Virus record (IMG/VR): IMGVR_UViG_3300005289_000052 | Span: 179,670-243,669 of that record | Reading direction: 5' to 3' (one strand) | DNA length: 64,000 nt | Part shown: positions 2,317 to 55,383 of the stretch, piece by piece | Layout: each line of letters begins with the position of its first letter | Numbering within the stretch: position 1 is the first letter of the stretch | The notes under the pieces: generated by a model | The model's database searches: none | What the model saw: only the letters and a program-made list of their open reading frames with translations | What the model was told of the DNA's origin: nothing | Position numbers and translations under genes: made by a program

Positions 2317-4353
2317 TTAACGGTTCCAGGTCCCGGTGAAGGGGGAACCGAACATGCGGGAACCTTGTTGCTGACCGCCACCGTAGTTGAAGAAGCCACC
2401 AACGTTGTTGGCAACCAGGTGGTTGAGGTCGTAGCCGCCGCGCTGGGTCAGGACGTTGTTGTCGTCCAGGCCTTTCGCAGGACGCACGTTCAGACCGCAA
2501 CGTACGATTGCTTCGGACAGCGCTTCCAGGAAGGAGTTGTCGAAGCTTACGCGACGAGCAAAGCCTTTGACGTGGATTTCCGATGCCAGGAGCTGACGCA
2601 GGATTTCTTTGCGCTGAGCCAGGCGGATTTCCAGAGGAACCTGGATGTTGCGGTGAGTTTCTTCCCACGCCTCGACCAGTTTCGGGTTGGTCTTGCCAGC
2701 CAGGTTGAGGATGGCCAGGTAGTCGATCTCACGCAGGTCACGACGATTGCCTTCGCGATCGTAGTAGAAGCCCAGGTGGATACGGTCCTGATCGTCGTAG
2801 CACACTGGCTTGGACGCATCGAACAACTGCTGGAAGTGACCCATGGTCAGGTTGTTGGCTGCTTGCAGGATGGTCAGACGTGCGTTCTCGTCGCCGTTGG
2901 CGGCCGCGATGTAGGTCTGGTGAATCCAGGACAGCTCGCCAACCTCGGCGATGTCGAGGGTGAAGATCAGCTTTTGACCGATCAGCATGTTGATGAGCTG
3001 GCGCATTTCGTTGTCACCGAAGTCGGCGGAACGAGTTGGCAGTGCATCAGGCTTGGCTTGCGGATCGCCGGTCAGGTTGACTTCGTAACCGGTAGCACCC
3101 AGGTCTTTCAGGTCCACGTCGGTAGCCTTGCCCTTGTTGGCGCGCCAGGTACCGGTGAACAGGCCGTTGCGGTTCAGGCCGAAAGCAGTGGACAGGGCCA
3201 GGAGTTGCAGCTCCATGTTCACGGCGTCGGTCAGGGTGTCGACCGAGGTCAGCACCATACGCGGCTGGTACATCTGGGTAGCCATCATTTGCTGCTGGTT
3301 GCCGAACATGCCGAAGGCTTGCTGCTGAGGCTGGAAGCCTGCTTGAGCCGGTTGGTACATCAGGTCGACGTAGCCAGCGACGCGAGTCAGTTGGCGGGTC
3401 TGTTGCAGGCTGAACTGCGAGTCGGCTTGGGACTGCGCGGACATGGTGACGATGATGTCTTCACGTACCGGCATGCCCACGATGTCTTCGCCGTGCTGAC
3501 GAGTGAACTCGACGCGCGCGCTCAGTTGGTCGCCGGAGCCGACTTCACCCAGGGTGAACGGTTCTTCGTTGCCGCCGAGCTGGTTGTCCATGATGGTGTA
3601 GCAGGCCTGGGTGCTGTTGTGCAGCAGGCGGTTGAAGCGGTTCTCGGTGCTGACTTCAGCTTCGGCTGGAATCACAACGCCACCGGCATCGTGGATCTGA
3701 GCGTTGAAGCCGTAGCTGTTGATGACGAACTGCTCCAGAACTTGCCAGTACGACTTGTTCAGGTAGATGTCGCCAGGCACGATGTCGACTTCGACGGTGG
3801 TGCCGCCCAGGTTCACGCTGCTTGGGTCCAGTGGAGCGCCGCTCGATTCGACCAGCAGGCTGTAGACAGCGATGTGCTTCTGGCCCTGGTATTCTTCGTA
3901 GTAGCAGACCAGGATGCTGGAGAAAGTCACCTTGGACTGGTTGTTGTCCAGTACCAGGATGTTGAACTCTTTCTTCTGCTGTTCGGTCAGCACTTTGCCA
4001 GCGCGTTCTTTCAGACCCAGTTGAATGGTCTGAACGTCTTCACCGGACATGTTCCGTGGAACAGGGCGGCGGTGGTTGGCGTTGATGTCCAGGACCGAAC
4101 GGCCACGGCTACCTACGCGGGAGTTGTTGTTGGATTGCTGGTTCATCTGAGCACCTGCGTTGAAAGGCTGTTGCGGTTGAGCATTGCCGCCAGTTGGCTG
4201 CTGTTGCTGCCCACCGGTTGGTTGTTGAGTTTGTTCTTGGGGCTGTTCAGCACCCGTTGGAGTCATACCCGCTTTCAGCATGGCATCTGCCATTGCGCTG
4301 TTCTGCGGCTGGTTCCCCTGGCTCTGGCCAGGTCCATTACGTTTGACGGACAT
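2317..4353 (-). CDS. chmA: Chimallin / phage nuclear shell protein (phiKZ gp54 type)
   Basis: 678 aa, strongly biased high-expression codons, lies between DNA polymerase block and nvRNAP beta' as in phiKZ; RIHLGFY...RDLREIDYL segment; low-complexity N-terminus and G/F-rich C-tail; early promoter upstream. Confidence 0.88.
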   Translation of the reverse strand: MSVKRNGPGQSQGNQPQNSAMADAMLKAGMTPTGAEQPQEQTQQPTGGQQQQPTGGNAQPQQPFNAGAQMNQQSNNNSRVGSRGRSVLDINANHRRPVPRNMSGEDVQTIQLGLKERAGKVLTEQQKKEFNILVLDNNQSKVTFSSILVCYYEEYQGQKHIAVYSLLVESSGAPLDPSSVNLGGTTVEVDIVPGDIYLNKSYWQVLEQFVINSYGFNAQIHDAGGVVIPAEAEVSTENRFNRLLHNSTQACYTIMDNQLGGNEEPFTLGEVGSGDQLSARVEFTRQHGEDIVGMPVREDIIVTMSAQSQADSQFSLQQTRQLTRVAGYVDLMYQPAQAGFQPQQQAFGMFGNQQQMMATQMYQPRMVLTSVDTLTDAVNMELQLLALSTAFGLNRNGLFTGTWRANKGKATDVDLKDLGATGYEVNLTGDPQAKPDALPTRSADFGDNEMRQLINMLIGQKLIFTLDIAEVGELSWIHQTYIAAANGDENARLTILQAANNLTMGHFQQLFDASKPVCYDDQDRIHLGFYYDREGNRRDLREIDYLAILNLAGKTNPKLVEAWEETHRNIQVPLEIRLAQRKEILRQLLASEIHVKGFARRVSFDNSFLEALSEAIVRCGLNVRPAKGLDDNNVLTQRGGYDLNHLVANNVGGFFNYGGGQQQGSRMFGSPFTGTWNR

Positions 4354-13212: not shown

Positions 13213-13298
13213 TGGTACCCGAAGCCGGACTCGAACCGGCACGGCCTAAGGCCAACGCATTTTAAGTGCGGTGCGTCTACCGATTCCGCCATTCGGGT
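13213..13298 (-). tRNA. tRNA-Leu(UAA)
   Basis: Cloverleaf, CT-TAA-AA loop, long variable arm, GGTTCGAGTCC, encoded CCA. Confidence 0.95.
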
Positions 13299-13397
13299 GA
13301 ATGGGTGCCTTCTTTCTATTTGTCTCTGAAAGGGTTCTTTGTTTCCGGCGCAGATCCTAACTCATTGACGAAAGAAGACATTGAAACGTTGAGAGAA

Positions 13398-13472
13398 CGA
13401 CGCTACAGGATTCGAACCTGCGGGAAATACCGGTCGCAATGCGACTGCCTTCGACCACTCAGCCAAGCGCCG
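13398..13472 (-). ncRNA. tRNA-like RNA with collapsed 3-nt anticodon loop and no CCA
   Basis: Acceptor CGGCGCT/AGCGTCG, D arm GCTGAGTGGTCGAAGGC, GTCGC-ATT-GCGAC, T arm GCAGG-TTCGAAT-CCTGT. Confidence 0.7.
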
Positions 13473-13545
13473 AACTCTCAAACTAGATTTCCCCACTAGG
13501 TTAAAGCCTAGCTGCCAAGGTCGGGATCGACCTAGTGGAGAAAGA

Positions 13546-13633
13546 TGGCGGAAGGACAGGGACTCGAACCCTGGGACCTTTTACAGTCGGCGGTTTTCAA
13601 GACCGCTGCAATACGCCGCTATGCGACCCTTCC
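13546..13633 (-). tRNA. tRNA-Ser(UGA)
   Basis: GCGGT-CTTGAAA-ACCGC, long variable arm, GCCA end. Confidence 0.95.
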
Positions 13634-13887
13634 GAAAATCAAGCCAGGGCTATTCCCTGGAGTCACTCCCACGCCTAGGCGACGCGACCGATTAGAGGAA
13701 ACCTGAGAGGACCGATCGGCACGGTTTGTCTCTCACCCTTTTGGGTATGGATGTCTAGACGTTGAGTTGTGTGAGCAACTCCCCATTCGTCCACAGGGCA
13801 GGGCCACCAGCAGGGCAGGCGCTTGGTGTTGGGCGGACCATCCCGTTTATACTCGGGTATCTAAGCGCCTGAGGCGCGATCCATAAA

Positions 13888-13975
13888 TGGCAGTAGATAA
13901 GAGATTCGAACTCTTGTGGCTGTTACACCAACACGCTTTCCAGGCGTGCCCCTTAAGCCTCTCGGGCAATCTACT
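13888..13975 (-). tRNA. tRNA-Ser(GGA)
   Basis: CACGC-CTGGAAA-GCGTG, long variable arm, GCCA end. Confidence 0.95.
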
Positions 13976-14142
13976 GTAAAAGATGTAGCAAATCAATCAT
14001 TACCCGGTGTGCGACGTGTTGTATTTAGACAGCTCGGTGTCCCTGCCAGGATTTCGGGTTGTACCTGGAATACTCTCCCGAAGGACAGTGTTATACCTTT
14101 CGGCGTTTTTAACTATAGGGACTGTTCTATCGCACCACTGAT

Positions 14143-14217
14143 TGAAACCTCTTGATGGAATCGAACCATCGTCTTCCCGCTTGGGCGGCAGGCTATCTAC
14201 CATTGAAATAAAGAGGG
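14143..14217 (-). tRNA. Atypical or pseudo tRNA-Gly(CCC)
   Basis: Cloverleaf with CCTGC-CGCCCAA-GCGGG (G33 instead of U33), good T arm, 1:72 mismatch, ends TTCA not CCA. Confidence 0.6.
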
Positions 14218-14218
14218 T

Positions 14219-14405
14219 GAGTTGTTTCCCTTTGGTCTATGTTCTCTGAGGTCGGACTCGAACCGACAATGTCTAACGCTCTAACCATTACGCTAGCACG
14301 CTTCGACGCACCCACAGACAGGCAGCCCTACTAAGGGGCCAGGGTCATCTTGCCCGAAGGCTCAACCCAGGGTATACCAATTCCCCCACTCGAGGGAAAC
14401 AACTC
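14219..14405 (-). ncRNA. Expanded tRNA-Leu(UAG)-like RNA with extra arms, enclosed by a 13-bp stem
   Basis: Leu-type D arm GGGGAATTGGTATACCC, GGCCC-CTTAGTA-GGGCT arm, T arm GTCGG-TTCGAGT-CCGAC, flanking GAGTTGTTTCCCT/AGGGAAACAACTC. Confidence 0.6.
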
Positions 14406-14585
14406 TGATCATTCTTAAGCAGTAGATTTCACCGTACCGTCGGCTGTAATGTTACTTTCTACTTGCCTAGGCTTTCGCCTTGATTCCCTGCATCCAGACT
14501 CGCGTTACTGGATACTGCTTAAGAACAACAATGACAAACAAGATTCCTTTGTAACGCGTATTGTATTGCCTAATTTTTCAAGGCG

Positions 14586-14665
14586 TGGCCAGGGGAGCCT
14601 TCGGACCCTACTCCCACATGGAACCCCTGTTGGTGGGGCTGCTTTAGAGCTTTTAGCGACTGGCC
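14586..14665 (-). pseudogene. Degenerate tRNA-Leu(CAA)-like element
   Basis: GGCCAG/CTGGCC-A acceptor, GCCCC-ACCAACA-GGGGT arm, variable hairpin; D and T loops non-canonical. Confidence 0.4.
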
Positions 14666-14694
14666 GTTTCACGTTACCGCTGTTTATCAATGTA

Positions 14695-14770
14695 TGGCAC
14701 GCATCCAAGGACTCGAACCTTGAACCTCTGGGTTTGGAGCCCAGCGCTCTGCCAGTTGAGCTAGACACGC
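14695..14770 (-). tRNA. tRNA-Trp(CCA)
   Basis: CTGGG-CTCCAAA-CCCAG, canonical D and T loops, GCCA end. Confidence 0.95.
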
Positions 14771-14879
14771 GTTGTTGCGGTCGCCCACACCACCGGTTAC
14801 TGATACCCTGAAGCGGGTTTCGGGTCATGAGTCCCCGTGCGTCAGTTAACTGCGATTTTACCAATGATGCAGGCGAACA

Positions 14880-14955
14880 TGGTAGCACCAAGTGGGTTCG
14901 AACCACCGACCTCGCCCTTATCAGGGGCGCGCTCTACCAACTGAGCTATAGCGCT
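14880..14955 (-). tRNA. tRNA-Ile(GAU)
   Basis: CGCCC-CTGATAA-GGGCG, ACCA end. Confidence 0.95.
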
Positions 14956-14962
14956 ATGAAAC

Positions 14963-15193
14963 TTAACACAGGATCGCGATACCCTCATCACAGTGACAAG
15001 GACAAGTACAAACCTCTTCGTCCTTACCATCGGGCTTTACAAGCACCCAATTGCGATGTGGTCGCGGTGTAGCGATGTCACGTTCTTCAATGCGAACGAT
15101 CTCACCAAACAGCTTTCGAAGGCGTTCAATATCGGGCGGACTATCGTAACTGGTCCTGAAAGTTGCTTGGGGGTATTTGCAACATCCAAACAT
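14963..15193 (-). CDS. Small Cys-rich protein (76 aa)
   Basis: Likely ATG at 15193 (MFGCCKY...CTCPCHC...C); follows the 60-aa gene. Confidence 0.55.
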   Translation of the reverse strand: MFGCCKYPQATFRTSYDSPPDIERLRKLFGEIVRIEERDIATPRPHRNWVLVKPDGKDEEVCTCPCHCDEGIAILC

Positions 15194-15209
15194 GACGTCA
15201 CCCTTGTGC

Positions 15210-15392
15210 TTAGGAAGCCTTGAGGACTTCGCCGATCTTGATCTCGCGATCGTCGTACACAACCCGGTGGCTGCTTTGACCATCTTGCAAGACGAACTCT
15301 TCATGAATCTCGCCAGTGACGCGATTCACGATACTCACTTTAACTTCCTTATCGGAAGAACAGTGGGCGGCAACAGTAACGGTGGTGGTCAT
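15210..15392 (-). CDS. Small beta-rich hypothetical protein (60 aa)
   Basis: GAGGAG RBS; MTTTVTVAAHC... Confidence 0.75.
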   Translation of the reverse strand: MTTTVTVAAHCSSDKEVKVSIVNRVTGEIHEEFVLQDGQSSHRVVYDDREIKIGEVLKAS

Positions 15393-15401
15393 GGTGACTC
15401 C

Positions 15402-15776
15402 TCAGGCTGAACGACGGTTGTGGTTGACGCGCTGGATTTCCAGCTCGACATACAATTCCATCGGGTACTGAGAAGGCAACTCAACCGAGACACGCGCATT
15501 GGCAGTCTCAGGATTCACGAACACCGCAAACGGTGCATTGGCGAAAGAGCCCAACACACCCTGCATGTTCACACCACGCGCAGCCTCGTTAACAATCGGG
15601 CTGTTGATGTTGCAAGCGATGTCAACACCATCGACGGTGGTAACACGCACAGCTTTCACCGATTCGATCGAGTCGGTTGCGTCGAAGTCTTCGATCTGGG
15701 TAGCCAACAGGCCAAACAGATTGACTTCACTAACCTTCAGCGGCAAGCGCAGATGGTCGACAGGATACTTGTACAT
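15402..15776 (-). CDS. Hypothetical protein; stand-alone paralog of the C-terminal domain of the DUF2829 protein
   Basis: Aligns by eye with the C-terminal ~120 residues of 15786..16418; both end NRRSx. Confidence 0.8.
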   Translation of the reverse strand: MYKYPVDHLRLPLKVSEVNLFGLLATQIEDFDATDSIESVKAVRVTTVDGVDIACNINSPIVNEAARGVNMQGVLGSFANAPFAVFVNPETANARVSVELPSQYPMELYVELEIQRVNHNRRSA

Positions 15777-15785
15777 GACAGCCCC

Positions 15786-16418
15786 TTAATCCGAGCGACG
15801 GTTGCGTTGGCCGTATTCGATACGAAGAACGGCGAACAGTTCGACACCGGCAGTCGGTGCGGCGTGAGCACAGGCTTCCCACATCTGGGTATCTACCTGA
15901 ATCGACAGAGCACGACCATTCGGCATCCGGTCGTTGAACGACTTCATGCGAGTCTCGCTCTTGTGTGCTACTGCTTCAACGACGTTGCTCTGGACGACCA
16001 GGGCATCAACCGTTTCAATGCGCACCACTTGGACTGAGAAGATCGCATCCAGCTTTTCCAACTTGGCGCCAGCGGCTTCACCCAACTCGTACAAGTTGGA
16101 GCGCACATCACCATCAAGCGGAATACGGACCTCGAACTTGTTGACGTAATCCTCAGCATCAAGGACTACCCAGTCGTCAGCCAGGATGTCAGACTGAGAG
16201 GCAACCCACGGCACAAAATCACCGTTGTGTGCTTTCAAGCCCAACCAAGGTCGCAGGTTCGGTGTAGGGTCCTTACGAACGTTGAGCCCAACGGTTCGGG
16301 CACCCACGTCATAGTGACTAGCGCCAACTAAGACGACCCACATGCCTTTACCGTTCCAACCCTCGCGTGTGGCGCGAGAGCCGTGCTTCAATCCCGTAAG
16401 GGCTTGACCGAACTCCAT
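15786..16418 (-). CDS. DUF2829 (Tad2-like anti-defence sponge) domain fused to an unknown C-terminal domain
   Basis: MEFGQAL..LK.G....R.GWNGKGMWV ... FVPWVASQSDILADDW signature; AGGAG RBS. Confidence 0.85.
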   Translation of the reverse strand: MEFGQALTGLKHGSRATREGWNGKGMWVVLVGASHYDVGARTVGLNVRKDPTPNLRPWLGLKAHNGDFVPWVASQSDILADDWVVLDAEDYVNKFEVRIPLDGDVRSNLYELGEAAGAKLEKLDAIFSVQVVRIETVDALVVQSNVVEAVAHKSETRMKSFNDRMPNGRALSIQVDTQMWEACAHAAPTAGVELFAVLRIEYGQRNRRSD

Positions 16419-16439
16419 GTGAAGCTCCTGTTGTGAAAT

Positions 16440-16513
16440 TGGGGTGAAGCCGGGAATCGAACCCTGGTCCTCTGCGCCACAAGCAGATGTTCTACCACTG
16501 AACTAGCAACACC
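16440..16513 (-). tRNA. tRNA-His(GUG)
   Basis: TCTGC-TTGTGGC-GCAGA, G-1:C73, CCA end. Confidence 0.92.
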
Positions 16514-16521
16514 ATTGAAAT

Positions 16522-16609
16522 TGGAGGTGGGTAAGAGATTCGAACTCTTGGAGCTGTTACACCCTGATCCTTAGCAAGGACCCGCAATCGGCCTCTCTGC
16601 CAACCCACC
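16522..16609 (-). tRNA. tRNA-Ser(GCU)
   Basis: GGTCC-TTGCTAA-GGATC, long variable arm, CCA end. Confidence 0.93.
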
Positions 16610-16629
16610 TTAAAACTGTACAACGAAAA

Positions 16630-16704
16630 TGGCTCCGAGACCTGGATTCGAACCAGGGACCAAACGGTTAACAGCCGTCTACTCTACCGCTGAGCTATCC
16701 CGGA
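16630..16704 (-). tRNA. tRNA-Asn(GUU)
   Basis: GACGG-CTGTTAA-CCGTT, GCCA end. Confidence 0.95.
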
Positions 16705-16811
16705 AAGGAAATTGAATGGGAAATGTGCCTCCGTCCCAAAGCGGAGGCGTAGGATATGGAGTGAACCATAACTGACGCCCGCAGCCACCCCGAAGGGCAA
16801 TCCACCACAAA

Positions 16812-16898
16812 TCAACGTAGGTTGCTTTATACCTGACTAAGCGACCAGACCATGGAGGAACTGACTAGGGGTATGATCCCTAGTTCTCCCTACGTTGA
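16812..16898 (-). ncRNA. Circularly permuted tRNA-like (YrlA-like topology) RNA candidate
   Basis: 10-bp terminal stem; T-like arm precedes an acceptor-like hairpin (with internal CCA) and a D-like arm. Confidence 0.5.
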
Positions 16899-16901
16899 AT
16901 A

Positions 16902-16977
16902 TGGCGCCTCCGAAGGGACTTGAACCCTCGGCCCCCGGCGTGACAGGCCGGTGCTCTAACCACTGAGCTACGGAAGC
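16902..16977 (-). tRNA. tRNA-Asp(GUC)
   Basis: CCGGC-CTGTCAC-GCCGG, GCCA end. Confidence 0.95.
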
Positions 16978-17171
16978 GTAAACGTCCTGAGGAAAATGGA
17001 CTCTGCGATCACCCAGACTGTGCCTGTAGGTGCATCACTTGTTGGCTCAAGGTTCGTGTAGACTACCATGGGCCAGGAACAATCTTGAGCGTGTCGACCG
17101 ACGTGGAGCACTAGAAAGCGCAACCCACTAGGAGAGAGGTACTCTCGATCCTTCTCAACAATCTCAATCAT
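16968..17171 (-). CDS. DUF1653-like small protein; stop codon lies inside tRNA-Asp
   Basis: Y..PSG..F.VLHVGRH......MVVY......G.VWV.....F pattern; GAGG RBS. Confidence 0.65.
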   Translation of the reverse strand: MIEIVEKDREYLSPSGLRFLVLHVGRHAQDCSWPMVVYTNLEPTSDAPTGTVWVIAESIFLRTFTLP

Positions 17172-17608
17172 GTTCATTCCTCGAATATGGCTCCGGCTTG
17201 CTTCCCGCCGCAAAGACGGTTCACTAACTCATGTGTAGCCAGACGACCCGCCGGAGAGGTCTTTAACTAGATGCACCAGTATCCCTGAGGTTCCGAAGAA
17301 GGCAGGTACACGATGCAACTCCACTGGACTACGAGTTTGGGTGATCCTCTCGGCAGATTCCCGCCGAGTTAATGCTGTGGGCCGCGGGGAGGGTTCGCTC
17401 AAAAGGCAACCAAAGCGGCTCTACTGCAAAGGATCGTAATCAACTTCCCTCGCACTGAGTGGATTGCTCAGCACTTATTTTCCTTGATCCCCAGGGACGG
17501 TAGGGACATCGACTCGGTGCCTGGCTACCCTTCCACAGGGCTGCTGGTAACGTTGTCTCACAAGGTAAAACCACCGTATCGCCAGCAAGGGTCGTTGCGG
17601 TGTTAAAA

Positions 17609-17684
17609 TGGCGGAGGGTAGTGGGATCGAACCACTGCATGATGGAATCAAAGTCCATTGCCTTACCAACTTGGCTAACCCTCT
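17609..17684 (-). tRNA. tRNA-Gln(UUG)
   Basis: ATGGA-CTTTGAT-TCCAT, GCCA end, 1:72 mismatch. Confidence 0.92.
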
Positions 17685-17834
17685 CTGAAATTTTTACCTC
17701 GCCGCTAAGCACGACACCTAGCGACTTATTATTACCGTGACCCCGGATCAAGGGTTGTCGATCAGGTTCGTTACGCCTGGCCCTACACGGTAAAACCCAT
17801 TGCAAAATCCCTAGGGCTATCACAATGTTAAAAG

Positions 17835-17919
17835 TGGTGGATGATCTAGGACTCGAACCTAGGGTGTATCAATGTGCCGATTTACAGTCGGTTGTCTTCG
17901 CCGCTCGACGCAATCATCC
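17835..17919 (-). tRNA. tRNA-Tyr(GUA)
   Basis: CCGA-CTGTAAA-TCGG, long variable arm, ACCA end. Confidence 0.93.
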
Positions 17920-18196
17920 AGTAAAGCTGACAGTGTTGCGCATCGAAGCGCTGCTGGTTCCCGGACCGCACCAGCTTTCCATTAACGACGGCTGACGCGT
18001 TGTCAGCTATGGCCCTCGTTAATGACTCCCCAGGAGTACACCGCCTCAAAATGGTGCCCCGTTTCCCTATTACGGGAATCTGTTCGACTGACTCCGTGAG
18101 AGGAGAGTCTAGGTTACACGGACTCAATGTCTCCACCCCGAAAGGTTCATGACACGAACTCCCATGGCCTCAGACCAGGACGTGAAACTAAGAATG

Positions 18197-18327
18197 TGGC
18201 CCCGCTACCTGGATTCGAACCAGGGACCTCCCGACGGGCACGCGTGTTCAAACGTTCTCACCGCAGCGCGGCTATTAACGTAACCGCATGTCAGACGAGT
18301 GCTCTATACCAACTGAGCTATAGCCGG
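18197..18327 (-). ncRNA. tRNA-like RNA (GAC/Val-like) with a 53-nt insertion in the anticodon loop
   Basis: Canonical TAGCTCAGTTGGTATAGAGC D arm, CCTGG-TTCGAAT-CCAGG T arm, GCCA end; insert at 18236-18288. Confidence 0.75.
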
Positions 18328-18330
18328 GAA

Positions 18331-18567
18331 TGAGAGAGACCGCTACCCCGATCTACGGACTGTGATACTCCAAGGGACTCAGGCGAAAGGGAACCGAAAG
18401 CCTGAGAACTGCGGTATGCAAGCGCAGTTTGTCTATTACCCCGGAGACGGGTCACGTGCAGTATGTTGGGTGTGTGGGGTCCGTCAAGTCTCCACGTTCC
18501 CCCTTGGTGGCGAAACCAAGAGCGTGCTGGAACTTTCCCTTCAACCTGCTTCGCGTCATTTCTCTCA
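18331..18567 (-). ncRNA. Candidate structured leader RNA of the tRNA operon
   Basis: Ends pair (TGAGAGA/TCTCTCA); several internal hairpins; no credible ORF. Confidence 0.4.
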
Positions 18568-18595
18568 TGATATCATTGAGCTATGTATTTTTTTA
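18567..18595 (-). promoter_or_regulatory. Putative middle-type promoter driving the tRNA/ncRNA operon
   Basis: AAAAAAATACAT resembles phiKZ middle motif AAanntTAC, about 20 nt upstream of the RNA block and just past a terminator. Confidence 0.4.
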
Positions 18596-18610
18596 CTGTA
18601 CTAGTCAGGG

Positions 18611-18637
18611 CAAAAAAAAGAGGGCTCCGAAGAGCCC
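18611..18637 (-). terminator. Intrinsic terminator
   Basis: GGGCTC-TTCG-GAGCCC TCTTTTTTTT. Confidence 0.8.
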
Positions 18638-18645
18638 ACTACAGA

Positions 18646-19044
18646 TTAAGGGATTTCTGGGAAACCAATGATCTTGAGGATCAGGTTTCTCTTACGACGG
18701 TACCAGCCATCTGGCATCGCAGGAATTCCACGGGCGGCAGACTCTTGTCGAATCTTCTCATCGGTCTGGAATAGCAGCGGTACTGGGAAGTAGTGCCAAG
18801 CATTCGGTTGACCATAGCGCACCAGAGCGTGAGCAGCTTTACGGCTCCACTCTTTTATAGTGACTCCGAGACGCAGGTCTTCTTTGATCTGTTCTTGTAA
18901 CTCAGGTGGGGAGGCTGGGTTCAAGAGACTGATGTAATGGGTGCTCTTCTTCTTGGATCGTCGAGCAGCATAGATGACGCCACCAAGTTCGTGGTGTACC
19001 TGATTGCCGTTAGCGTAAGTGTGGGTGTAGTATTCGCGAGCCAT
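18646..19044 (-). CDS. Hypothetical early protein (132 aa)
   Basis: ORF track; sits between early promoter and terminator. Confidence 0.75.
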   Translation of the reverse strand: MAREYYTHTYANGNQVHHELGGVIYAARRSKKKSTHYISLLNPASPPELQEQIKEDLRLGVTIKEWSRKAAHALVRYGQPNAWHYFPVPLLFQTDEKIRQESAARGIPAMPDGWYRRKRNLILKIIGFPEIP

Positions 19045-20930: not shown

Positions 20931-21896
20931 TTACAGAACCAGGAAGTCCTGGGTTGCAGCGTCTTTCTCGGTCACGAGGACTTTGGCAGAGCTGCGGCCT
21001 TCACGACGTTCCACGAATTGCTCGACCGTACGGTTAAGCGTGTCGTAAGATTGGCCAAGGAACTGCGTCGAAATGACGTAGTGCAGTTCGCTGACACCCT
21101 CGACCGGCGTCTGGAAGAAACCGGCGCAGGAGTATTCCGGCACTGGGCTTTGCAGTTGCGCTTGGTCGCGATCGGCGTACAGGCTTGCGATTGCGATTGG
21201 GTCCAGGATTTCCTTGACCTTCTCGGCGTCGCTGTAGATGTCCAGCAAGGCCAGTTGTGCTTCGACCGAAGTGGACTTGTTGAAACGCAGCCAGTGCAGA
21301 ACGTCCATGGTGTCCAGCTCGGCGTTCTGGCGGGAAGCCAGGTAGCGCAGGCAGGTGATGGCGAAGTGCAGTTGACCGTCGATGGTAGAACGCGTGGTGC
21401 CCTCGCCACTGTGGCGGTAGAAGGCAACGACCGGAACCTTGATACCGTTGGAGATCGCCGACAGCGACTTCAAGGTGTTCAGGCTGTTCTGTGCAGTGAT
21501 GGTGGACTCGGCGGAACCCGCACTGACCACGACCACAGCTTTGCCACGTTCCAGGAGTTCACGAACGATCAGCGGACCGATCACCGAACCCGAACCGCCC
21601 GAGGCGGAGAACACGACGATGTTGAAATCTTCTGGTGGCTGAGCCAACAGGATTTGCTTGATGCTGTCCGAGATGACCTGGTGGTTCTCGCGACGAACCT
21701 TACCGGAACCGTCAGTGCCTTCGAGCACGAAGATGGCTTCGGCTGGGATGGTGGTGTCCAGGTTGGAACGGCTGGTGTCTACGAAAGAGACCAGTGGGGT
21801 GGCGAAACCTGCGACTTCTTTCTGGCCGAGGTAACGTTTGGCGATGTTGTTGCCCAGACCGCCTGCACCGTAAATACGAACTTTGCCTTGAGACAT
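20931..21896 (-). CDS. phuZ: PhuZ phage tubulin
   Basis: GAGGLGNN, VDTSRSN, GSGKVR, ASGGSGSV tubulin signature, ELDTMD (T7 loop), acidic/hydrophobic C-tail. Confidence 0.95.
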   Translation of the reverse strand: MSQGKVRIYGAGGLGNNIAKRYLGQKEVAGFATPLVSFVDTSRSNLDTTIPAEAIFVLEGTDGSGKVRRENHQVISDSIKQILLAQPPEDFNIVVFSASGGSGSVIGPLIVRELLERGKAVVVVSAGSAESTITAQNSLNTLKSLSAISNGIKVPVVAFYRHSGEGTTRSTIDGQLHFAITCLRYLASRQNAELDTMDVLHWLRFNKSTSVEAQLALLDIYSDAEKVKEILDPIAIASLYADRDQAQLQSPVPEYSCAGFFQTPVEGVSELHYVISTQFLGQSYDTLNRTVEQFVERREGRSSAKVLVTEKDAATQDFLVL

Positions 21897-23381: not shown

Positions 23382-24257
23382 TTAGGCCGCTAGTGAAGGT
23401 CTCGGTTTACGTTCTTTGCTGAACATAAACTCCATACGGGACTTAATGACCTGGTTAAAGTCGTAAGCTGGGAACGCACGGTCGTCATGAAACCACTTGA
23501 AAGAGTACCCGCCAATTTCAGTGATGTCCTTGTCTGCCAGTTTCTTGGCAATCAGCTCAGCGTCGATGCCAGTCATCAGGTAGGCACCCTGGATGGAGTG
23601 GCACACGATGGTGCGGTTATCACCGTGGTCAACGCAACGGATCTTGTCGCCGCCTTTCAAAGGCTTCTCTGGTGGGACGTGTTTCTTCGGAGTATGTTTG
23701 GCTACGAACTCTTCGCGAGGGTTCTTGGCCATTTGATGGACTACGTCCGGCAGGGTCAACTTAGCAGCCAGATCCTGTACCGTCATGTCCATAGCCGAAG
23801 CCGCTACCTGTAGCGAAGGGTAGATGAACATACGGCCGGTGTGTTTCTGACAGACCAGGATTTGAGCACGCCACGAAGAACCACTAGGCTTTTCACGAGC
23901 CGGTGCATCCATCGCTCTAGAAAGCTGGTGACTGATGGTGGGGTTCAGTGTATTGCTGTCTTCCCAGAATAGATTGGAAGCCTTGCAGTTTTCTGGGTTC
24001 ATGTCACGATGGCCAGTAATCCACATCTGGTTACCATCGCCCACGGGTGGCGGACCGTTAAACAATTCGTTTACCAGATCCCCTAAGTACATCTCGGGAC
24101 TCCCGTGCATCTGGAGCTTAAGATAGCCGTCTTCGTCATTGCGACATTGGATCATCCGCCAACGGTTACCCAAACCTTCTTTGCGCACTCGCGCATTACC
24201 CGCATCGCTAACTTCATATTTGCGATTCTCGGGTACTGGTTCCCATCTTTCAGTCAT
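23382..24257 (-). CDS. NUMOD4 / HNH homing-endonuclease-like protein with C-terminal NUMOD1-like repeats
   Basis: ERWEPVP...YEVSDAGNAR; GHRDMNPENCKASNLFW; YPSLQVAA and HSIQGAY repeats. Confidence 0.75.
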   Translation of the reverse strand: MTERWEPVPENRKYEVSDAGNARVRKEGLGNRWRMIQCRNDEDGYLKLQMHGSPEMYLGDLVNELFNGPPPVGDGNQMWITGHRDMNPENCKASNLFWEDSNTLNPTISHQLSRAMDAPAREKPSGSSWRAQILVCQKHTGRMFIYPSLQVAASAMDMTVQDLAAKLTLPDVVHQMAKNPREEFVAKHTPKKHVPPEKPLKGGDKIRCVDHGDNRTIVCHSIQGAYLMTGIDAELIAKKLADKDITEIGGYSFKWFHDDRAFPAYDFNQVIKSRMEFMFSKERKPRPSLAA

Positions 24258-24287
24258 GGTAGTAACTCCAAGCGTTAGTTGTCACAT

Positions 24288-24307
24288 GGATGATATAGAT
24301 CTCAAAT
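24288..24307 (-). promoter_or_regulatory. Early promoter
   Basis: ATTTGAGATCTATATCATCC. Confidence 0.6.
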
Positions 24308-24327
24308 CTTTTTCAAGGTACTACGGT

Positions 24328-25077
24328 ATGTCATATCAAGAAGGTAAGGGTAGTACATTTACACACGATGGAGTCGAGTATCCACTGGACCCATTCTTGG
24401 CTCGTGCTCAGAAACTCAAGGTCAAGCAACTGCGGATCAACGACATCAAGTGGAATCTGGATGGGATGACTCTGGATGCTGAACGTGTTCGTCGTGCTGA
24501 CACCAGCGTTCCGATCCTGTTCACGGTAGATCCTCAATGGGGTATCGTCATTGTTGATGGTACTCATCGCCTAGCCAAGGCTGTACAGCAAGGAAAGTAC
24601 TCGATCTCAGGTCGGGAAATCCCAAAAGCATGGTTTGACGAAATCGGGTCGGTGTCCATGGAATCGGATAACACCAACTTCACAGTAGGACAGGTGACTC
24701 GTGAACAAGTCTTTGAATGGCTCGCCCAACATGACCAAGCCAGACCTGAGCCCCCTAATGAATCAGCTTTTGCCGCTGAAGGTGCTGGGATTGATCGAGT
24801 CTACGCCTTCTGCTGGGACGGTGCCGAAATCGCAGGCTATGCGTGCCTACTCAACGGTCAACGATATCTTATCGACATGTACGTGTGTCCCCAGTATCGA
24901 CGTAAGGGTGTAGGTCGTTTGTTGGTCAACTCGTTGCTCATTGATCTGGTGGTGGTGAAGTCTTATCAGACAGCCATCATTGAGTTCCTAGAGAAATGTG
25001 GGTTCCGCTTAGAGAACGACTTCGTAAGAACCCGAATCTACCGTAAGTACCACGGACCTAAGGTACACGCTTACTGA
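24328..25077 (+). CDS. ParB/Srx-like domain fused to GNAT acetyltransferase
   Basis: PIL...VIVDGTHRLAKA; DMYVCPQYRRKGVGRLL (acetyl-CoA motif) and FLEKCGF; probable start ATG 24328. Confidence 0.8.
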   Translation: MSYQEGKGSTFTHDGVEYPLDPFLARAQKLKVKQLRINDIKWNLDGMTLDAERVRRADTSVPILFTVDPQWGIVIVDGTHRLAKAVQQGKYSISGREIPKAWFDEIGSVSMESDNTNFTVGQVTREQVFEWLAQHDQARPEPPNESAFAAEGAGIDRVYAFCWDGAEIAGYACLLNGQRYLIDMYVCPQYRRKGVGRLLVNSLLIDLVVVKSYQTAIIEFLEKCGFRLENDFVRTRIYRKYHGPKVHAY

Positions 25078-49932: not shown

Positions 49933-52900
49933 TCAACCTTTTCTGTACGCCTCAACCACCTTCTTGCTGAGGACCTTGAGAAGCGTGGTAGTGGTACCAA
50001 TCAACTCAGGCGACAGCACGATACGGTTCGAGAAGGAAGTGTACGAGAAGATGGCACCCAGTGGCAGACCAGACAGCGTCGTGTTGACACCGGACATCAC
50101 CCGACCAAAGATGGTCTTCATCTGGTTAGCGAACACACCTTTGTCACCCACGCCTGCCCCGACCTCAGTCGTTACATAGATGCGGATCAACATCGAGTCC
50201 ATGTTCAGAGGGTTACCCGCTACACGCAGGGCACCGTCTACGCTACCAGTCAGAACCTTACGACCCAAAGCCCTTTGGAGCTTAGCCCGTTCTTTGTCCC
50301 CGTGATCAGCAATGGCGCGAAGACTTTCAGACATGTCTTCTTTATCGCCGTTGTAGTACACCTCGATGGATTCTACCACCCCGTTGTACTTCGCTTTCGG
50401 AGTTGGACTCCCCAGCAAACGGAGTGTATCGATCGAGTCTTCGTCGAACAAATCGGTGTTAGCCGTTACGGCGTCTTCGATTGTACATAAAATATCCTCA
50501 CTATCGACCTTTTGCCCCTTGGTTACCAGACCGTGAATCTTCTGGTCAAACGTTACCACGAGGTCACGAGGTTTAGTGATCTGAGTCCGAAGCAATTTTG
50601 CAATGTCTTCAGAGATCACCGAGGAGTCTTCTAAGGTATCGGCACACTCCAGAATAGCTGTCCGTACAGTGATACCAGTCTTCAAAGAAACTTGAGACGG
50701 GTTCAACGCACTAGGCTTGAAGTAGTGAGAGTTGTAGGCAACCACATCACCAGCTTTGATCTTCTGCCCCACCTTGAGTTCTGAAACTACCTCATGTGGG
50801 AAGATCTTACCGGCTACCGTACCGAAGCGACGACCCAGCTCTACCGAACGCTGAGTACCGTCTTTGTATTCAACCGTAATAGCTTTGTCGCTGACAGCAA
50901 CCACAACACCATCACCCTTCGCCGTGTAGGCAAAGAGGTCGTTCACACGGTGAGGCAATACGTCGCCATAACCAGTCTGAACTGGCTGGACATCGTAACC
51001 CACGGCAAACATGGTGGAGTGATACTGGATACCAATGAAGTTCACACGCTTCGGGTCGTCCCGGTCTGCACAAGGCGAAACCAGAGCAGCAGTCGAGATC
51101 AACTTGGTCGCACCATCTTGACCAGGTTCGTAACGACGGCTCAAACCACGCAAGGAAGTGAAGTTCGGGTCCGCAGTGGTAAACGTCGAAATAGCTACGT
51201 CACCAGAGTCCACGGTCGACTCGGAGATCACACCCATGTCGTTAGGGTGGAATACACGGCTACGCTTAACCATCGAACGACGGCTACGTCCACCAGTACC
51301 ACCAAACGTCACAGACTCTTGGGTACGCAAGCACTCAATCGGGTTCGACTCTTCCACCTGACCTTTTGACGGGTCGTCCTGAATAGCCTGCCAGATAGCG
51401 TGAGGCGCCATCTCCATCTTGTTCCCCGCCGCACCACGACGAGCGTTGTGTACACGAGCGGAGCGAACCATCTCTGCGTAGACCGCACCAGAGATCCTTT
51501 CATACCCCTTGATCCGCATGTACTCCATATCCGTTTCGGCAGGAGCCCAGTCAGTGGTCAACAACTCCACTGCACGAACCAACAGACCTTCCCACTCAGT
51601 GGGTTCCTTCATCTCTGTCAGGAGGTCGAAGGTGATAGGGTCAATGAACAGATCACGCAACAGGTCGAGTTCACGCAGATAACGCACACCGATCTTGTTG
51701 GTCTCCAACACGTTCAGGTAAACGTCTTTGCGGTTGAAGTCGTACACACTGTGCGAACGGATAGCTTTCCAATACGACAGGAAGCCAGCCATCAACAGAG
51801 AGACTACTTTATCGTCACGATGGAAGATCAAGTTCTCATCGGCAAAGCGAACAGCGTATTCGCCTTCACCCAACTTGAGTCGCTCACCCACCTGCTGACG
51901 ACGGAACACGGTTGGCCTGAGGGCCTTGATCACACGTTCCAGACCGAAGTAGTAGCCGAGGATAATGCCCATCGGGATGGACTTGTTGAACACACCCATC
52001 TCTGCCATTTCAAGCGGAGCCTTAGAGGTGTCCAACTGCAACAGCTCTTCCAGTTTACCCAATGGTTCAGGACCACGGGCTTTCTGGACGTACAGGGTAT
52101 CGTACTGATCGACCAAGACCAGTTCAGCACCCTTCTTACCGATGACCACCATGCCCTTGGATTCAGCAGCACGAACTTTAGCCTCACCGAACTCCTTCTC
52201 ACGATTAGTAAACTCGAAGAAGAAGTCAATCCCTACCGCAGTGAAGCGCCGGAAACTCTGAGACAGCAAGCTGTAGAGTCGTGGGGTTTTGTTCAGGTGA
52301 TCAAACACGTTTGACGGGCGCAACTCAGACACACGGTTGTCTTTCGGGTCCAGTCCGATTGCTCGGATGGTATCACTCAGCCATTTTGGATAGTTGTTGA
52401 CAGATCGTGGTGACCGATCAACGAAGACTTTACCATAATAGCTAGTGAGAGCAACACTGGTCGAATCAACCTTCCGAATAGGGACATCGCCACGCTGCTT
52501 CCGTAAGCTGTAGCGTACCCCGTTTGCCAAATAAGAACCATCTGGTGATACCTTGGGAACTTTAAAACGAATGGTGGAGGCAGGGCCGGTAGCCGGTGCC
52601 AGTTTAATGGTGTGGATTTCGTAGTGGTTGAGAACATCCTCTACTTCTTCCACTTGGTAATCGACAATCGCGATACCAGCGTTCTGCAACGACATCACCG
52701 AGTTGACGATGTCTTTGTTCAGGATCTCCGTGACGTACCGGCTATCGAACTCCAGCAGAGACGATTGCAGCATGGTCTTGTCGAAGACCAGTGGGTTGTC
52801 AGGGATCTTGGTGGACGACGTGATCTTTAGGGACTCAGGCTTGATCACAATGTGGTCAGCCAACATACCTGGACCGTACGGGTTCTTGATCTCTTTGTAG

Positions 52901-54207: not shown

Positions 54208-54221
54208 ACGCTACTCCAGTG

Positions 54222-55382
54222 TCAATCTTTGTAAAGGAACAGGGACTCTTCCACCAGGTCAACAATCGACTTGGCGTAGTACGGGGCCAAGACACAGAGC
54301 TTCATGGCAGGGTTGAGCATGTCATCAGCAGTGAAGCGGTAGATGTCGTCCAACATACCGAGGTAGTAACCCGACAGACCGTCAGCACCGAAGTTGATGG
54401 CAGGGCGCAGGAACGATGCTACTTGAGCATAGTTGCAAGGACCTTTGTTGATGATGTCGACCACACGATCGTATTCATCTTCCACCTGAACAGCCATGTC
54501 CTCGAACTTCAACGCAACCTCGAGCAGAGCCAGCATCTCTTTCGGAGCCAGCGCACGGAAGTCACGGAACTTGAGTTGGTTATTCTTAACGTTGGTCCAA
54601 CGAGCCGAACGATGCTGTTTCTCAGCAAAGTGCTGGAGCAACTTACGAACCTCTGGGTTCACCGAAGAGGTGTCCACAGGTTCTGGGTTGAAGATACGCT
54701 CCTCACCCGGCAACACGATCTTGAGATCCTTGTCACCCAGTGCAGCAGTAGGAGCTGTGAACTTCTGACAGAACTGTTCGAACTCCATGCGGATGACGTC
54801 TTCTTTCAACGTCTTGTTCATCGCAGCGTTGTTCAGACGCTTAACGATCTCGCCGATCTCTTTACGGACCGCTTGACCTTTAACGATGTACGCACCCTGG
54901 TACGGTTTCAACCAACCAGAGAAGTTGCCGAACATGTCGATCAGGTTATAGTCCAGACGACCATTGATGCAAAGACGTTTGAATACAACCTCGTCCTTGA
55001 TCTTGCCAGTCGGCGAACCTTTGATCTTCTCGATACGAGGCTTGAGCTTAGCCACACGAGCAGAAATCTGCTGTGGGGCGTTGCCGGTGTAGAAACGTTG
55101 CTTGTTGTTGAAGATGCTTTCGTACGCTTTGTTCAACGCACGCTTAACACGGTCCAACATCGAGTTGATCGCTTCCAGGGAGATGGTCGCCTCGTCTTCC
55201 ATCGAGATCTGAGGGATACCCGTCGCCACACAGAACTCAGCAACCGCCTCCATTGACTCCATGGAGATCTGGCCACCTTGCAGCTCGCTACGAGCCTTCA
55301 TCAGAGCACGCTTGGCGCTACGCAGATCGCGCATCATCTTGCGGTGGTCTTTACGTTTCATCGAGTGGATGTCGAAGCTCAT
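54222..55382 (-). CDS. Probable internal head protein with propeptide, between vRNAP genes
   Basis: SMESME, ISME, ISLE sites in first ~75 aa. Confidence 0.6.
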   Translation of the reverse strand: MSFDIHSMKRKDHRKMMRDLRSAKRALMKARSELQGGQISMESMEAVAEFCVATGIPQISMEDEATISLEAINSMLDRVKRALNKAYESIFNNKQRFYTGNAPQQISARVAKLKPRIEKIKGSPTGKIKDEVVFKRLCINGRLDYNLIDMFGNFSGWLKPYQGAYIVKGQAVRKEIGEIVKRLNNAAMNKTLKEDVIRMEFEQFCQKFTAPTAALGDKDLKIVLPGEERIFNPEPVDTSSVNPEVRKLLQHFAEKQHRSARWTNVKNNQLKFRDFRALAPKEMLALLEVALKFEDMAVQVEDEYDRVVDIINKGPCNYAQVASFLRPAINFGADGLSGYYLGMLDDIYRFTADDMLNPAMKLCVLAPYYAKSIVDLVEESLFLYKD

Positions 55383-55383
55383 C

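What the first reader, a model, noticed from the sequence alone, without database searches (positions are those of the whole stretch)
18197..18327. tRNA with a 53-nt structured insertion at the 37/38 position
Seen: intact D arm, T arm and GCCA end. After CT-GAC-A comes a 53-nt insert (18236-18288) with hairpin GCGGTTA-CGTTAA-TAGCCGC and a second loop containing AACGT, complementary to ACGTT of the first (possible kissing loop). TCTGAC/GTCGGG can sequester the anticodon. Known: 37/38 is the canonical archaeal/eukaryotic intron site, bacteria lack that splicing endonuclease, and 53 nt is too short for a group I intron. Inference: either a tRNA spliced by an unknown phage nuclease/ligase, or an aminoacylatable non-decoding mimic.
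Basis: partly seen in the sequence, partly recalled or inferred. Interest (0 to 1): 0.8.

Follow-up and report, generated by a model that had tools for sequence, protein, structure and literature searches.

The report
Phage tRNA-shaped RNA with cargo hairpin
A nucleus-forming jumbo phage encodes a tRNA-shaped RNA whose anticodon loop has been replaced by a conserved 50-nt structured hairpin, so it most likely cannot decode and acts as a natural "tRNA scaffold" displaying a small functional RNA module, not as an intron-containing tRNA.

Summary
The feature is real. On the minus strand, 18197-18327 encodes a 131-nt RNA with a textbook tRNA body (Rfam tRNA 44.9 bits) and an encoded CCA. About 53 nt are inserted where the anticodon loop should close.

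Eleven distinct homologues occur in related chimalliviruses (nucleus-forming jumbo phages). The whole fold covaries, insert included: 93.6% of cells paired against 75.5% in shuffles, and 26 of 40 pairs show compensatory changes. The insert is a nested rod.

The body derives from a tRNA-Val(GAC)-like gene. The former anticodon loop is not conserved among orthologues: U33 and the anticodon mutate, or the loop becomes helix. No bulge-helix-bulge splice motif is conserved. One relative has an orthologous body with a UUCG-capped stem instead of the cargo. Another carries this cargo in a scaffold that elsewhere holds a different 88-nt insert.

A metatranscriptome contig retains the insert. No spliced form, RNA ligase or splicing endonuclease was found.

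Best reading: a stable, non-decoding, tRNA-scaffolded RNA whose rod is a recognition module. The partner and function are unknown. I found no prior description.

The parts
18197..18327 (-). Whole tRNA-shaped RNA, 131 nt including the encoded CCA (18197-18199)
   Evidence: Rfam tRNA 44.9 bits. Family model R1 scores 123.8 bits. 11 homologues found.
18321..18327 (-). Acceptor stem 5' strand, CCGGCUA. C-1 at 18328 is conserved.
   Evidence: Invariant in the five window-clade orthologues, including the G3.G70 mismatch.
18301..18318 (-). D arm, with A14, G18, G19 and A21
   Evidence: Invariant columns in the alignments.
18295..18299 (-). Anticodon-stem 5' strand, CUCGU. It pairs with 18230-18234.
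   Evidence: Helix 3 of the consensus structure, with compensatory changes.
18288..18294 (-). Vestigial anticodon loop CUGACAU (Val GAC). Nucleotides 34-37 (CUGA) lie in an internal loop and 38-40 (CAU) are paired in P2.
   Evidence: Matches the E. coli tRNA-Val loop. Not conserved in orthologues.
18239..18290 (-). Cargo rod (helices P2-P5), the conserved about 52-nt module
   Evidence: Cargo-only model R2 scores 60.7 bits. Exactly one copy in each of the 12 loci that hold it (11 distinct genes; L044 repeats L043), and none elsewhere in the window.
18273..18276 (-). 5' side of the 4x3 internal loop (AAUA). The UA is invariant.
   Evidence: Invariant U and A in all members.
18257..18259 (-). 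3' side of the internal loop (GAG). The GA is invariant.
18260..18272 (-). P5 terminal hairpin. The stem covaries and the loop varies (GCU here, UUCG in L004 and L051).
   Evidence: Helix 6: 4 of 6 pairs show compensatory changes.
18249..18251 (-). Conserved 3-nt bulge, UUG (UUU in most relatives), between P4 and P3 (GUU/AAC)
   Evidence: Second U invariant, first U in 10 of 11 members; flanking U-A and C-G pairs invariant.
18230..18234 (-). Anticodon-stem 3' strand, UCGGG
18208..18224 (-). T arm, CCUGG-UUCGAAU-CCAGG
   Evidence: Helix 7 is 100% paired, with 4 of 5 pairs compensatory.
18197..18207 (-). Acceptor 3' strand UAGCGGG, discriminator G73, and CCA
18560..18604 (-). Invariant AT-rich block just after the upstream terminator. 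Probable promoter of the tRNA operon (inferred).
   Evidence: Alignment A4. Terminator at 18612-18637.

Best explanation
This is a non-decoding, tRNA-shaped stable RNA, in effect a natural 'tRNA scaffold'. It descends from a tRNA-Val(GAC)-like gene. Its anticodon loop has been opened and extended into an irregular rod of roughly 25 bp.

Inferred mechanism. It is transcribed as the first gene of the phage tRNA operon. The intact L-shaped body makes it a substrate for the tRNA maturation machinery (RNase P at the 5' end, 3' trimming or CCA repair; CCA is encoded here). That gives precise ends and nuclease resistance. The rod cannot present an anticodon.

The conserved surface of the rod is the functional site, most likely a docking site for a phage or host protein. 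It consists of a U-rich 3-nt bulge flanked by invariant pairs, a 5-bp helix, and then a 4x3 NNUA/GAN internal loop that resembles a loop-E/S-turn.

Shown: the gene, its homologues, the covarying fold, loss of anticodon-loop constraint, interchangeable cargo and scaffold, and RNA that retains the insert. Inferred: processing, stability, lack of charging, and protein binding. The partner and the biological role are unknown.
For: 1. The body is a true tRNA fold. Rfam scores 44.9 bits. The tertiary-contact nucleotides U8, A14, G15-C48, G18, G19, A21, G46 and the T-loop are invariant across members.

2. In 11 distinct homologues from relatives with PhuZ identity of 62-100%, 93.6% of cells pair against 75.5% in shuffles (0 of 500 shuffles reach it). 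26 of 40 pairs have compensatory changes. Slid controls give 34-46%. The insert helices P3, P4 and P5 all covary.

3. In the 10-member alignment, G.U cells number 42 and A.C cells 6, so the structure acts at the RNA level on this strand.

4. The anticodon-loop positions are unconstrained. U33 becomes A (L003, L085) or G (L045). The loop is fully paired in L050, L005 and L006.

5. The L085 B-locus orthologue has no cargo, and its arm is a 9-bp stem capped by UUCG.

6. There is exactly one cargo copy per genome locus, at either of two tRNA-like loci.

7. At the same locus, the same scaffold carries this cargo in L085 and a different 88-nt insert in L004-L007.

8. A wastewater metatranscriptome contig (231 nt, depth 15) covers the leader, 5' half and insert, while the flanking phage sequence is uncovered.

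9. Engineered tRNA scaffolds with the same architecture are processed and stabilised in E. coli (PMC3753655).
Against: - No direct evidence for 5'/3' processing, stability, or any binding partner.
- The RNA-seq contig spans the predicted RNase P site, so at least some molecules are unprocessed. DNA carry-over in that library cannot be fully excluded.
- In the window and in L043 the vestigial loop CUGACAU is still intact, so a residual decoding role after an unknown splicing step is not excluded for these two.
- The loop-E/S-turn assignment rests on sequence pattern only, and the usual bulged G is not conserved.
- Only 64 kb of the 243.7-kb genome was screened for enzymes.
Confidence: 0.6

Rival explanations
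1. It is a genuine intron-containing tRNA-Val(GAC). The 53-nt insert is removed at 37/38 or 38/39 by an unknown phage or host endonuclease, the halves are ligated, and the product decodes GUC/GUU.
For: In the window and in L043, removing the insert would leave a canonical loop CUGACAU on a 5-bp stem. ARAGORN in intron mode calls Val(GAC). The window has no other tRNA-Val. Lak megaphages are reported to carry conserved 'enigmatic' tRNA introns (PMC6784885).
Against: Three of five close orthologues would give defective loops (A33, G33, or a 6-nt loop) even though body and insert stay under strong constraint. No conserved bulge-helix-bulge motif. No group I core or Rfam ribozyme. The cargo-less orthologue has a tetraloop, not an anticodon loop. 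No skipping joint was seen in any run, and an RNA contig retains the insert. No RtcB, Rnl, EndA or PNK domain in 50 window ORFs.
Confidence: 0.1
2. It is mainly a processing 'punctuation' element. The tRNA fold recruits RNase P and RNase Z to release the conserved structured RNAs on either side (as mascRNA does for MALAT1), and the rod has no function of its own.
For: It sits between two conserved structured non-coding elements, about 18341-18456 and 18056-18181. The cargo-less UUCG-capped body in L085 is still conserved.
Against: Unpaired nucleotides of the rod (UA, GA, the bulge U's) and specific flanking pairs are conserved across about 40% protein divergence. Each genome keeps exactly one cargo copy, even when it has moved between loci. 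That pattern is not expected of a neutral spacer.
Confidence: 0.15
3. It is a tRNA mimic or decoy that titrates a tRNA-binding host factor, such as a tRNA-targeting defence nuclease, a modification enzyme or a synthetase. The rod would add affinity or block catalysis.
For: The tRNA body is perfectly preserved and the CCA is encoded. The cluster also holds a Tad2-like anti-defence domain protein at 15786-16418, so this is a counter-defence neighbourhood.
Against: Purely contextual. Acceptor stems differ widely among members, which argues against mimicry of one specific tRNA. Known anticodon nucleases read the anticodon loop, which is absent here. This is a special case of the best explanation rather than a true alternative.
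Confidence: 0.1
4. It is a decaying tRNA pseudogene disrupted by a recent insertion.
For: G3.G70 and U31.U39 mismatches. ARAGORN in default mode does not call it. Folding z-scores are ordinary.
Against: Eleven homologues show compensatory changes in every helix and invariant tertiary nucleotides. The G3.G70 mismatch is itself invariant in the window clade. The flanks are conserved.
Confidence: 0.03

Closest known systems
Engineered 'tRNA scaffold' RNAs (Ponchon and Dardel; PMC3753655)
   Same: Acceptor, D and T arms are kept. The anticodon stem-loop is replaced by a hairpin-closed cargo. The body gives precise processing and protection from nucleases.
   Different: That system is synthetic. 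Here the architecture is natural, phage-encoded and evolutionarily conserved, and the cargo is of unknown function.
Archaeal and eukaryal tRNA introns at 37/38, spliced through the bulge-helix-bulge motif
   Same: Position in the anticodon loop and length (tens of nucleotides). The intron extends the anticodon stem.
   Different: No conserved BHB. The anticodon loop is not conserved. The host is a bacterial virus. No endonuclease or ligase was found in the window. No spliced form was seen.
Bacterial group I introns in tRNA anticodon loops (e.g. cyanobacterial tRNA-Leu UAA)
   Same: An insertion in the anticodon loop of a bacterial-type tRNA gene.
   Different: 53 nt against more than 200 nt. 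No P1-P9 core. No Rfam group I hit at E <= 10.
Lak megaphage tRNA 'enigmatic introns' (PMC6784885)
   Same: Phage tRNA genes with conserved insertions that bacterial-mode tRNA finders miss.
   Different: A different phage lineage. Their structures were not compared here. Those were interpreted as introns of otherwise assignable tRNAs.
Phage T4 stable RNAs species 1 and 2 (rnaC, rnaD) in the tRNA cluster
   Same: Stable RNAs of about 120-140 nt and unknown function, encoded within a phage tRNA operon. rnaC has a T-arm-like 3' domain.
   Different: No cloverleaf with a cargo rod. Model R1 does not hit them. No sequence homology.
tRNA-like modules of other ncRNAs (tmRNA tRNA-like domain, YrlA/Y RNA, mascRNA, gammaherpesvirus TMERs); from general knowledge
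   Same: A tRNA-like fold is used for processing or protein recognition rather than for decoding.
   Different: Different topology: YrlA has a closed acceptor end, and tmRNA lacks a D stem and is alanylated through G3.U70. Rfam YrlA scored only 16 bits, on a relative's neighbouring element. None carries this rod.

Membership tests
tRNA (Rfam RF00005) | Cloverleaf body scoring above the family gathering threshold | tested here: met
   44.9 bits against 29. Acceptor, D and T helices covary.
tRNA (functional decoder) | 7-nt anticodon loop with conserved U33, a stable anticodon and a purine at 37 across orthologues | tested here: not met
   The loop region reads CUGACAU, UAGACAU, UGGACAU or GGCCAU (paired) in close orthologues. 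It is continuous helix in L005 and L006.
tRNA (functional decoder) | Aminoacylation | not testable with these tools
   Needs an acid-urea gel or charging assay. Discriminator G73 and the buried A35/C36 argue against ValRS recognition (inference from known Val identity rules).
BHB-intron tRNA (archaeal/eukaryal type) | Bulge-helix-bulge motif (3-nt bulge, 4-bp helix, 3-nt bulge) at the exon-intron junctions, conserved in homologues | tested here: not met
   A scripted search with a positive control found only scattered candidates outside the exon-intron junctions. One set recurs in three close orthologues, inside P3/P4, and conflicts with the covarying fifth pair of P4.
BHB-intron tRNA (archaeal/eukaryal type) | Splicing endonuclease and RNA ligase available | tested here: inconclusive
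   None among 50 window ORFs scanned with Pfam or PHROGs. The other ~180 kb of the genome and the host were not examined.
BHB-intron tRNA (archaeal/eukaryal type) | A spliced RNA product exists | tested here: inconclusive
   No joint skipping 18236-18288 in 4 runs, and an RNA contig retains the insert. Contigs can hide rare forms.
Group I intron | Conserved catalytic core of about 200 nt or more | tested here: not met
   The insert is 53 nt. No Rfam hit at E <= 10 over 17950-18650.
Small self-cleaving ribozymes in Rfam (hammerhead, twister, pistol, hatchet, hairpin) | Match to the family covariance model | tested here: not met
   No hit at E <= 10. The first internal loop of the rod is variable or absent.
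tRNA-scaffolded cargo RNA (architecture class, so far only engineered) | tRNA acceptor, D and T arms intact, with the anticodon loop replaced by a hairpin-closed insert | tested here: met
   Consensus structure with covariation. The cargo is separable from the scaffold.
Loop-E / sarcin-ricin (S-turn) internal loop | AGUA/GAA-type asymmetric loop with a bulged G, U.A trans pair and sheared A.G | tested here: inconclusive
   The NNUA/GAN pattern has invariant UA and GA, but the 'bulged G' position varies (A, C, U).

The most novel reading that the evidence does not exclude
Nucleus-forming jumbo phages of this clade may use tRNA bodies as a general expression, processing or trafficking platform for small effector RNAs. 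The cargoes would be interchangeable: the 52-nt rod here, an unrelated 88-nt domain in relatives, or none. This rod would then be the RNA half of a previously unknown RNP, for example one that titrates a host tRNA-binding or defence factor. That would be the first natural counterpart of the synthetic tRNA scaffold. A much less likely alternative that is still not excluded is a new, non-BHB and non-group-I tRNA splicing pathway in a bacterial virus.
Probability: 0.3. Interest if true: 0.8.

Novelty: new variant of a known kind. Interest (0 to 1): 0.6.

Why it matters
Phage tRNA clusters are usually read as codon-supply or anti-defence tRNA sets. Here one 'tRNA' is under strong selection but cannot decode. 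Its anticodon arm carries a conserved structured module, and relatives swap that module in and out of tRNA bodies.

If confirmed, this defines a new family of phage non-coding RNAs. It would be a natural version of a widely used biotechnology trick, the tRNA scaffold. It also flags a region dense in uncharacterised structured RNAs in chimalliviruses, whose RNA biology (a nucleus-like compartment and RNA export) is poorly understood.

There is a practical warning too. An insertion in the anticodon loop of a phage tRNA gene should not be annotated as an intron by default.

Tried and rejected
- **Close relatives among deposited phage genomes.** None by megablast or blastn. The closest isolate, Xanthomonas phage LucasX (PhuZ 44%), has no tRNA cluster near PhuZ.
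- **Collection scans with exon-anchored and motif-anchored DNA patterns.** IMG/VR gave only the window's contig and five relatives. The metagenome and GTDB genome scans gave only the window's own contig plus ordinary 76-nt tRNAs.
- **Rfam at a permissive threshold.** Nothing but tRNA.
No covariation.
- **Bulge-helix-bulge search.** No conserved motif.
- **Thermodynamic z-scores.** Uninformative.
- **Cargo-only model R2.** No second copy in the window, and none in 16 more distant chimallivirus PhuZ loci.
- **Similarity of the cargo to E. coli RNAs.** None.
- **T4 rnaC/rnaD as homologues.** No hit.
- **Pfam or PHROGs scans of 50 window ORFs for RNA ligase, endonuclease or kinase domains.** None found.
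- **K-turn reading of the bulge and internal loop.** Rejected by inspection: there are no tandem G.A pairs next to the bulge, and it would break covarying pairs.
- **Literature searches.** No description of this RNA.

Full report
**1. What is there**

The feature lies on the minus strand. Rfam's tRNA model matches 18200-18327 at 44.9 bits (gathering score 29; E = 2.5e-6 for the whole window), with about 55 nt inserted in the anticodon loop. The encoded CCA takes the gene to 18197.

ARAGORN in bacterial mode does not call it, although it ordinary tRNAs at 13213-17919 on the same strand. With introns allowed it reports tRNA-Val(GAC) with a 53-nt intron.

The body is canonical:
- acceptor CCGGCUA/UAGCGGG, with a G3.G70 mismatch
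- discriminator G73 and encoded CCA
- a D arm with A14, G18, G19 and A21
- an AGGUC variable loop
- a T arm at 18208-18224

Minimum-free-energy z-scores are ordinary: -0.45 for the whole RNA and -0.71 for the insert. Thermodynamics alone would not single it out.

**2. Genomic setting**

The window is 100% identical to IMGVR_UViG_3300005289_000052, a 243,669-bp contig. It is a chimallivirus-type, nucleus-forming jumbo phage. It encodes:
- the nuclear shell protein (2317-4353)
- PhuZ tubulin (20931-21896)
- multisubunit RNA polymerase subunits
- terminase and tail sheath

No deposited phage genome is close. The best PhuZ identity is 44%.

The gene is the first in the tRNA operon. It lies about 270 nt downstream of an intrinsic terminator at 18612-18637 that ends a 132-aa ORF.

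**3. Homologues**

PhuZ-anchored and neighbour-protein-anchored searches recovered relatives from IMG/VR, ENA, NCBI and Logan assemblies.

A covariance model (R1) finds one strong hit (108-138 bits) in each of 11 distinct genomes. They fall into three groups:
- Orthologues at the same locus as the window, just upstream of tRNA-Tyr: L003, L043, L045, L050 and L085.
- Genes at a second locus, just after tRNA-Ser(UGA): L004, L005, L006, L007 and L051.
- More distant chimalliviruses (PhuZ at or below 46%), bacterial and archaeal genomes, and the metagenome collection. None of these yielded a further member.

**4. Structure**

The consensus is a cloverleaf whose anticodon stem continues into a rod. 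Going outward, the rod consists of:
- a variable internal loop or helix
- P2
- P3 (GUU/AAC)
- a 3-nt bulge (UUK)
- P4 (5 bp)
- a 4x3 internal loop (NNUA / GAN)
- the P5 hairpin, with a variable loop that is UUCG in two members

On the 11-member alignment:
- 93.6% of cells pair, against 75.5% in shuffles (0 of 500 shuffles reach the observed value).
- 26 of 40 pairs show changes on both sides.
- Sliding the partner strand drops pairing to 34-46%.
- P3, P4 and P5 are 100%, 98% and 90.5% paired, and 2 of 3, 4 of 5 and 4 of 6 of their pairs respectively have compensatory changes.

In the 10-member alignment G.U cells outnumber A.C cells 42 to 6, so selection acts on the RNA of this strand and not on a DNA palindrome.

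ACGUU/AACGU are the two strands of nested P4, not kissing loops.

**5. Is it an intron?**

The body's nearest E. coli match is tRNA-Val. The stretch YUGACAUG reproduces that tRNA's anticodon loop plus G39. The ancestor was therefore a Val(GAC)-type tRNA, and the cargo sits between the loop's 3' end and the 3' stem strand.

The loop is no longer constrained. Close orthologues read:
- CUGACAU in the window and L043
- UAGACAU in L003 and L085
- UGGACAU in L045
- GGCCAU in L050, fully paired with the opposite strand

In L005 and L006 the arm is a continuous helix. The substitutions increase pairing across the former loop.

Other tests also go against splicing:
- A scripted bulge-helix-bulge search, with a positive control, found nothing conserved.
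- Rfam found no group I core or small ribozyme.
- In L085 the second-locus orthologue has the same body and trailer but lacks the cargo, and its arm is a 9-bp stem capped by UUCG, not an anticodon loop.

**6. Cargo and scaffold are separable**

A cargo-only model (R2) finds exactly one copy in each of the 12 loci that hold it (11 distinct genes; L044 repeats L043), and none elsewhere in the 64-kb window.

The copy sits at the first locus in six genomes and at the second locus in five.

At the first locus, the L085 scaffold has an acceptor and T arm nearly identical to those of the L004/L005 genes. It carries this cargo, whereas L004-L007 carry an unrelated, highly conserved 88-nt insert.

**7. 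Expression**

Two runs of uncertain type (X4, X10) hold a ~96% relative. In them the insert and 5' half are identical to the window except for a 1-nt D-loop deletion.

A wastewater RNA-seq run has a 231-nt contig (depth 15). It covers 18237-18435, which is the leader, the 5' half and the insert, and it runs on into the diverged 3' half. The flanking phage sequence has zero depth. No run shows a joint skipping the insert.

This suggests an abundant insert-containing RNA. Two caveats apply. Contigs hide rare forms, and this one crosses the predicted RNase P site.

**8. Enzymes**

Fifty window ORFs were scanned with Pfam or PHROGs. None had an RNA ligase, splicing endonuclease or polynucleotide kinase domain. 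Notable hits were a Tad2-like domain, a NUMOD4 motif and a GNAT acetyltransferase. About 180 kb of the genome was not examined.

**9. Interpretation**

The best-supported reading (confidence about 0.6) is a non-decoding tRNA-scaffolded RNA.
- The tRNA body supplies folding, end-processing and stability, as in engineered tRNA scaffolds (PMC3753655).
- The rod's conserved bulge and loop-E-like internal loop form a recognition site for an unknown partner.

The rivals are:
- a spliced tRNA-Val (about 0.1)
- a processing punctuation element (about 0.15)
- a tRNA decoy (about 0.1, a special case of the best explanation)
- a pseudogene (about 0.03)

**10. Novelty**

No description was found in the searchable literature. 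The nearest reports are the Lak megaphage 'enigmatic' tRNA introns and the T4 rnaC/rnaD stable RNAs, which the family model does not hit.

I class it as a new variant of a known kind: tRNA-like non-coding RNA.

Noticed in passing
window 18341-18456 (-), within the leader 18328-18604: The ~270-nt leader is about 90% identical among the five window-clade loci (window, L003, L043, L045, L050), although the adjacent ORF has diverged to 73% protein identity. Its 3' ~115 nt folds as a three-way junction with some compensatory changes. The same element is conserved in L005 and L006, where it precedes a small ORF and a different tRNA-like gene. No Rfam match. The RNA-seq contig covers 18237-18435.
   Followed up: partly
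window 18340-18349 (-): The leader contains GGGGUAGCGG, a near copy of the 3' acceptor strand of the tRNA-like gene (GGUAGCGGGG). It could pair with the 5' acceptor strand as an alternative hairpin. Its significance is unknown.
   Followed up: no
window 18056-18181 (-): The trailer between the tRNA-like gene and tRNA-Tyr is another conserved, multi-branched structured element, with 8 compensatory pairs across 5 relatives. In addition, 17918-18051 is identical in the ~96% relatives in runs X4 and X10. No Rfam match.
   Followed up: partly
L004 13973-14130, L005 13793-13953, L006 13794-13951, L007 13912-14071: A second kind of tRNA-scaffolded RNA of about 158 nt. The tRNA body (Rfam 22 bits) carries a highly conserved 88-nt insert unrelated to the cargo studied here. 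It occupies the locus where the window has its gene.
   Followed up: partly
L085 16479-16561: A tRNA-like gene orthologous to the second-locus family but without cargo. Its anticodon arm is a 9-bp helix closed by a UUCG tetraloop, so it is a tRNA body with no anticodon at all.
   Followed up: yes
window 14239-14317 (-), T arm 14251-14267: An extra, degenerate tRNA-like sequence between tRNA-Gly and tRNA-Trp. ARAGORN in default mode and Rfam at gathering threshold both miss it (R1 15 bits).
   Followed up: no
L003 17800-17899; L043 10866-10964; L007 13793-13895: Further tRNA-like genes of about 100 nt with elongated, non-canonical anticodon arms in relatives (R1 40-58 bits).
   Followed up: no
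window 15786-16418 (-): A 210-aa ORF inside the tRNA cluster has an N-terminal Tad2-like (Thoeris anti-defence 2) domain (Pfam E = 8e-23). It is conserved at this position in all relatives, so the cluster doubles as a counter-defence neighbourhood.
   Followed up: partly
window 23382-24257 (-) and 24139-25077 (+): One ORF has a NUMOD4 motif (homing-endonuclease-like) and another is a GNAT acetyltransferase. Both lie near PhuZ. The two predicted ORFs overlap, so one start may be wrong.
   Followed up: no
window 2317-4353 (-), 20931-21896 (-), 49933-57012 (-): Chimallin-like nuclear shell protein, PhuZ tubulin and multisubunit RNA polymerase genes identify the window as a chimallivirus. It is only distantly related to any isolate (best PhuZ identity 44%).
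   Followed up: partly
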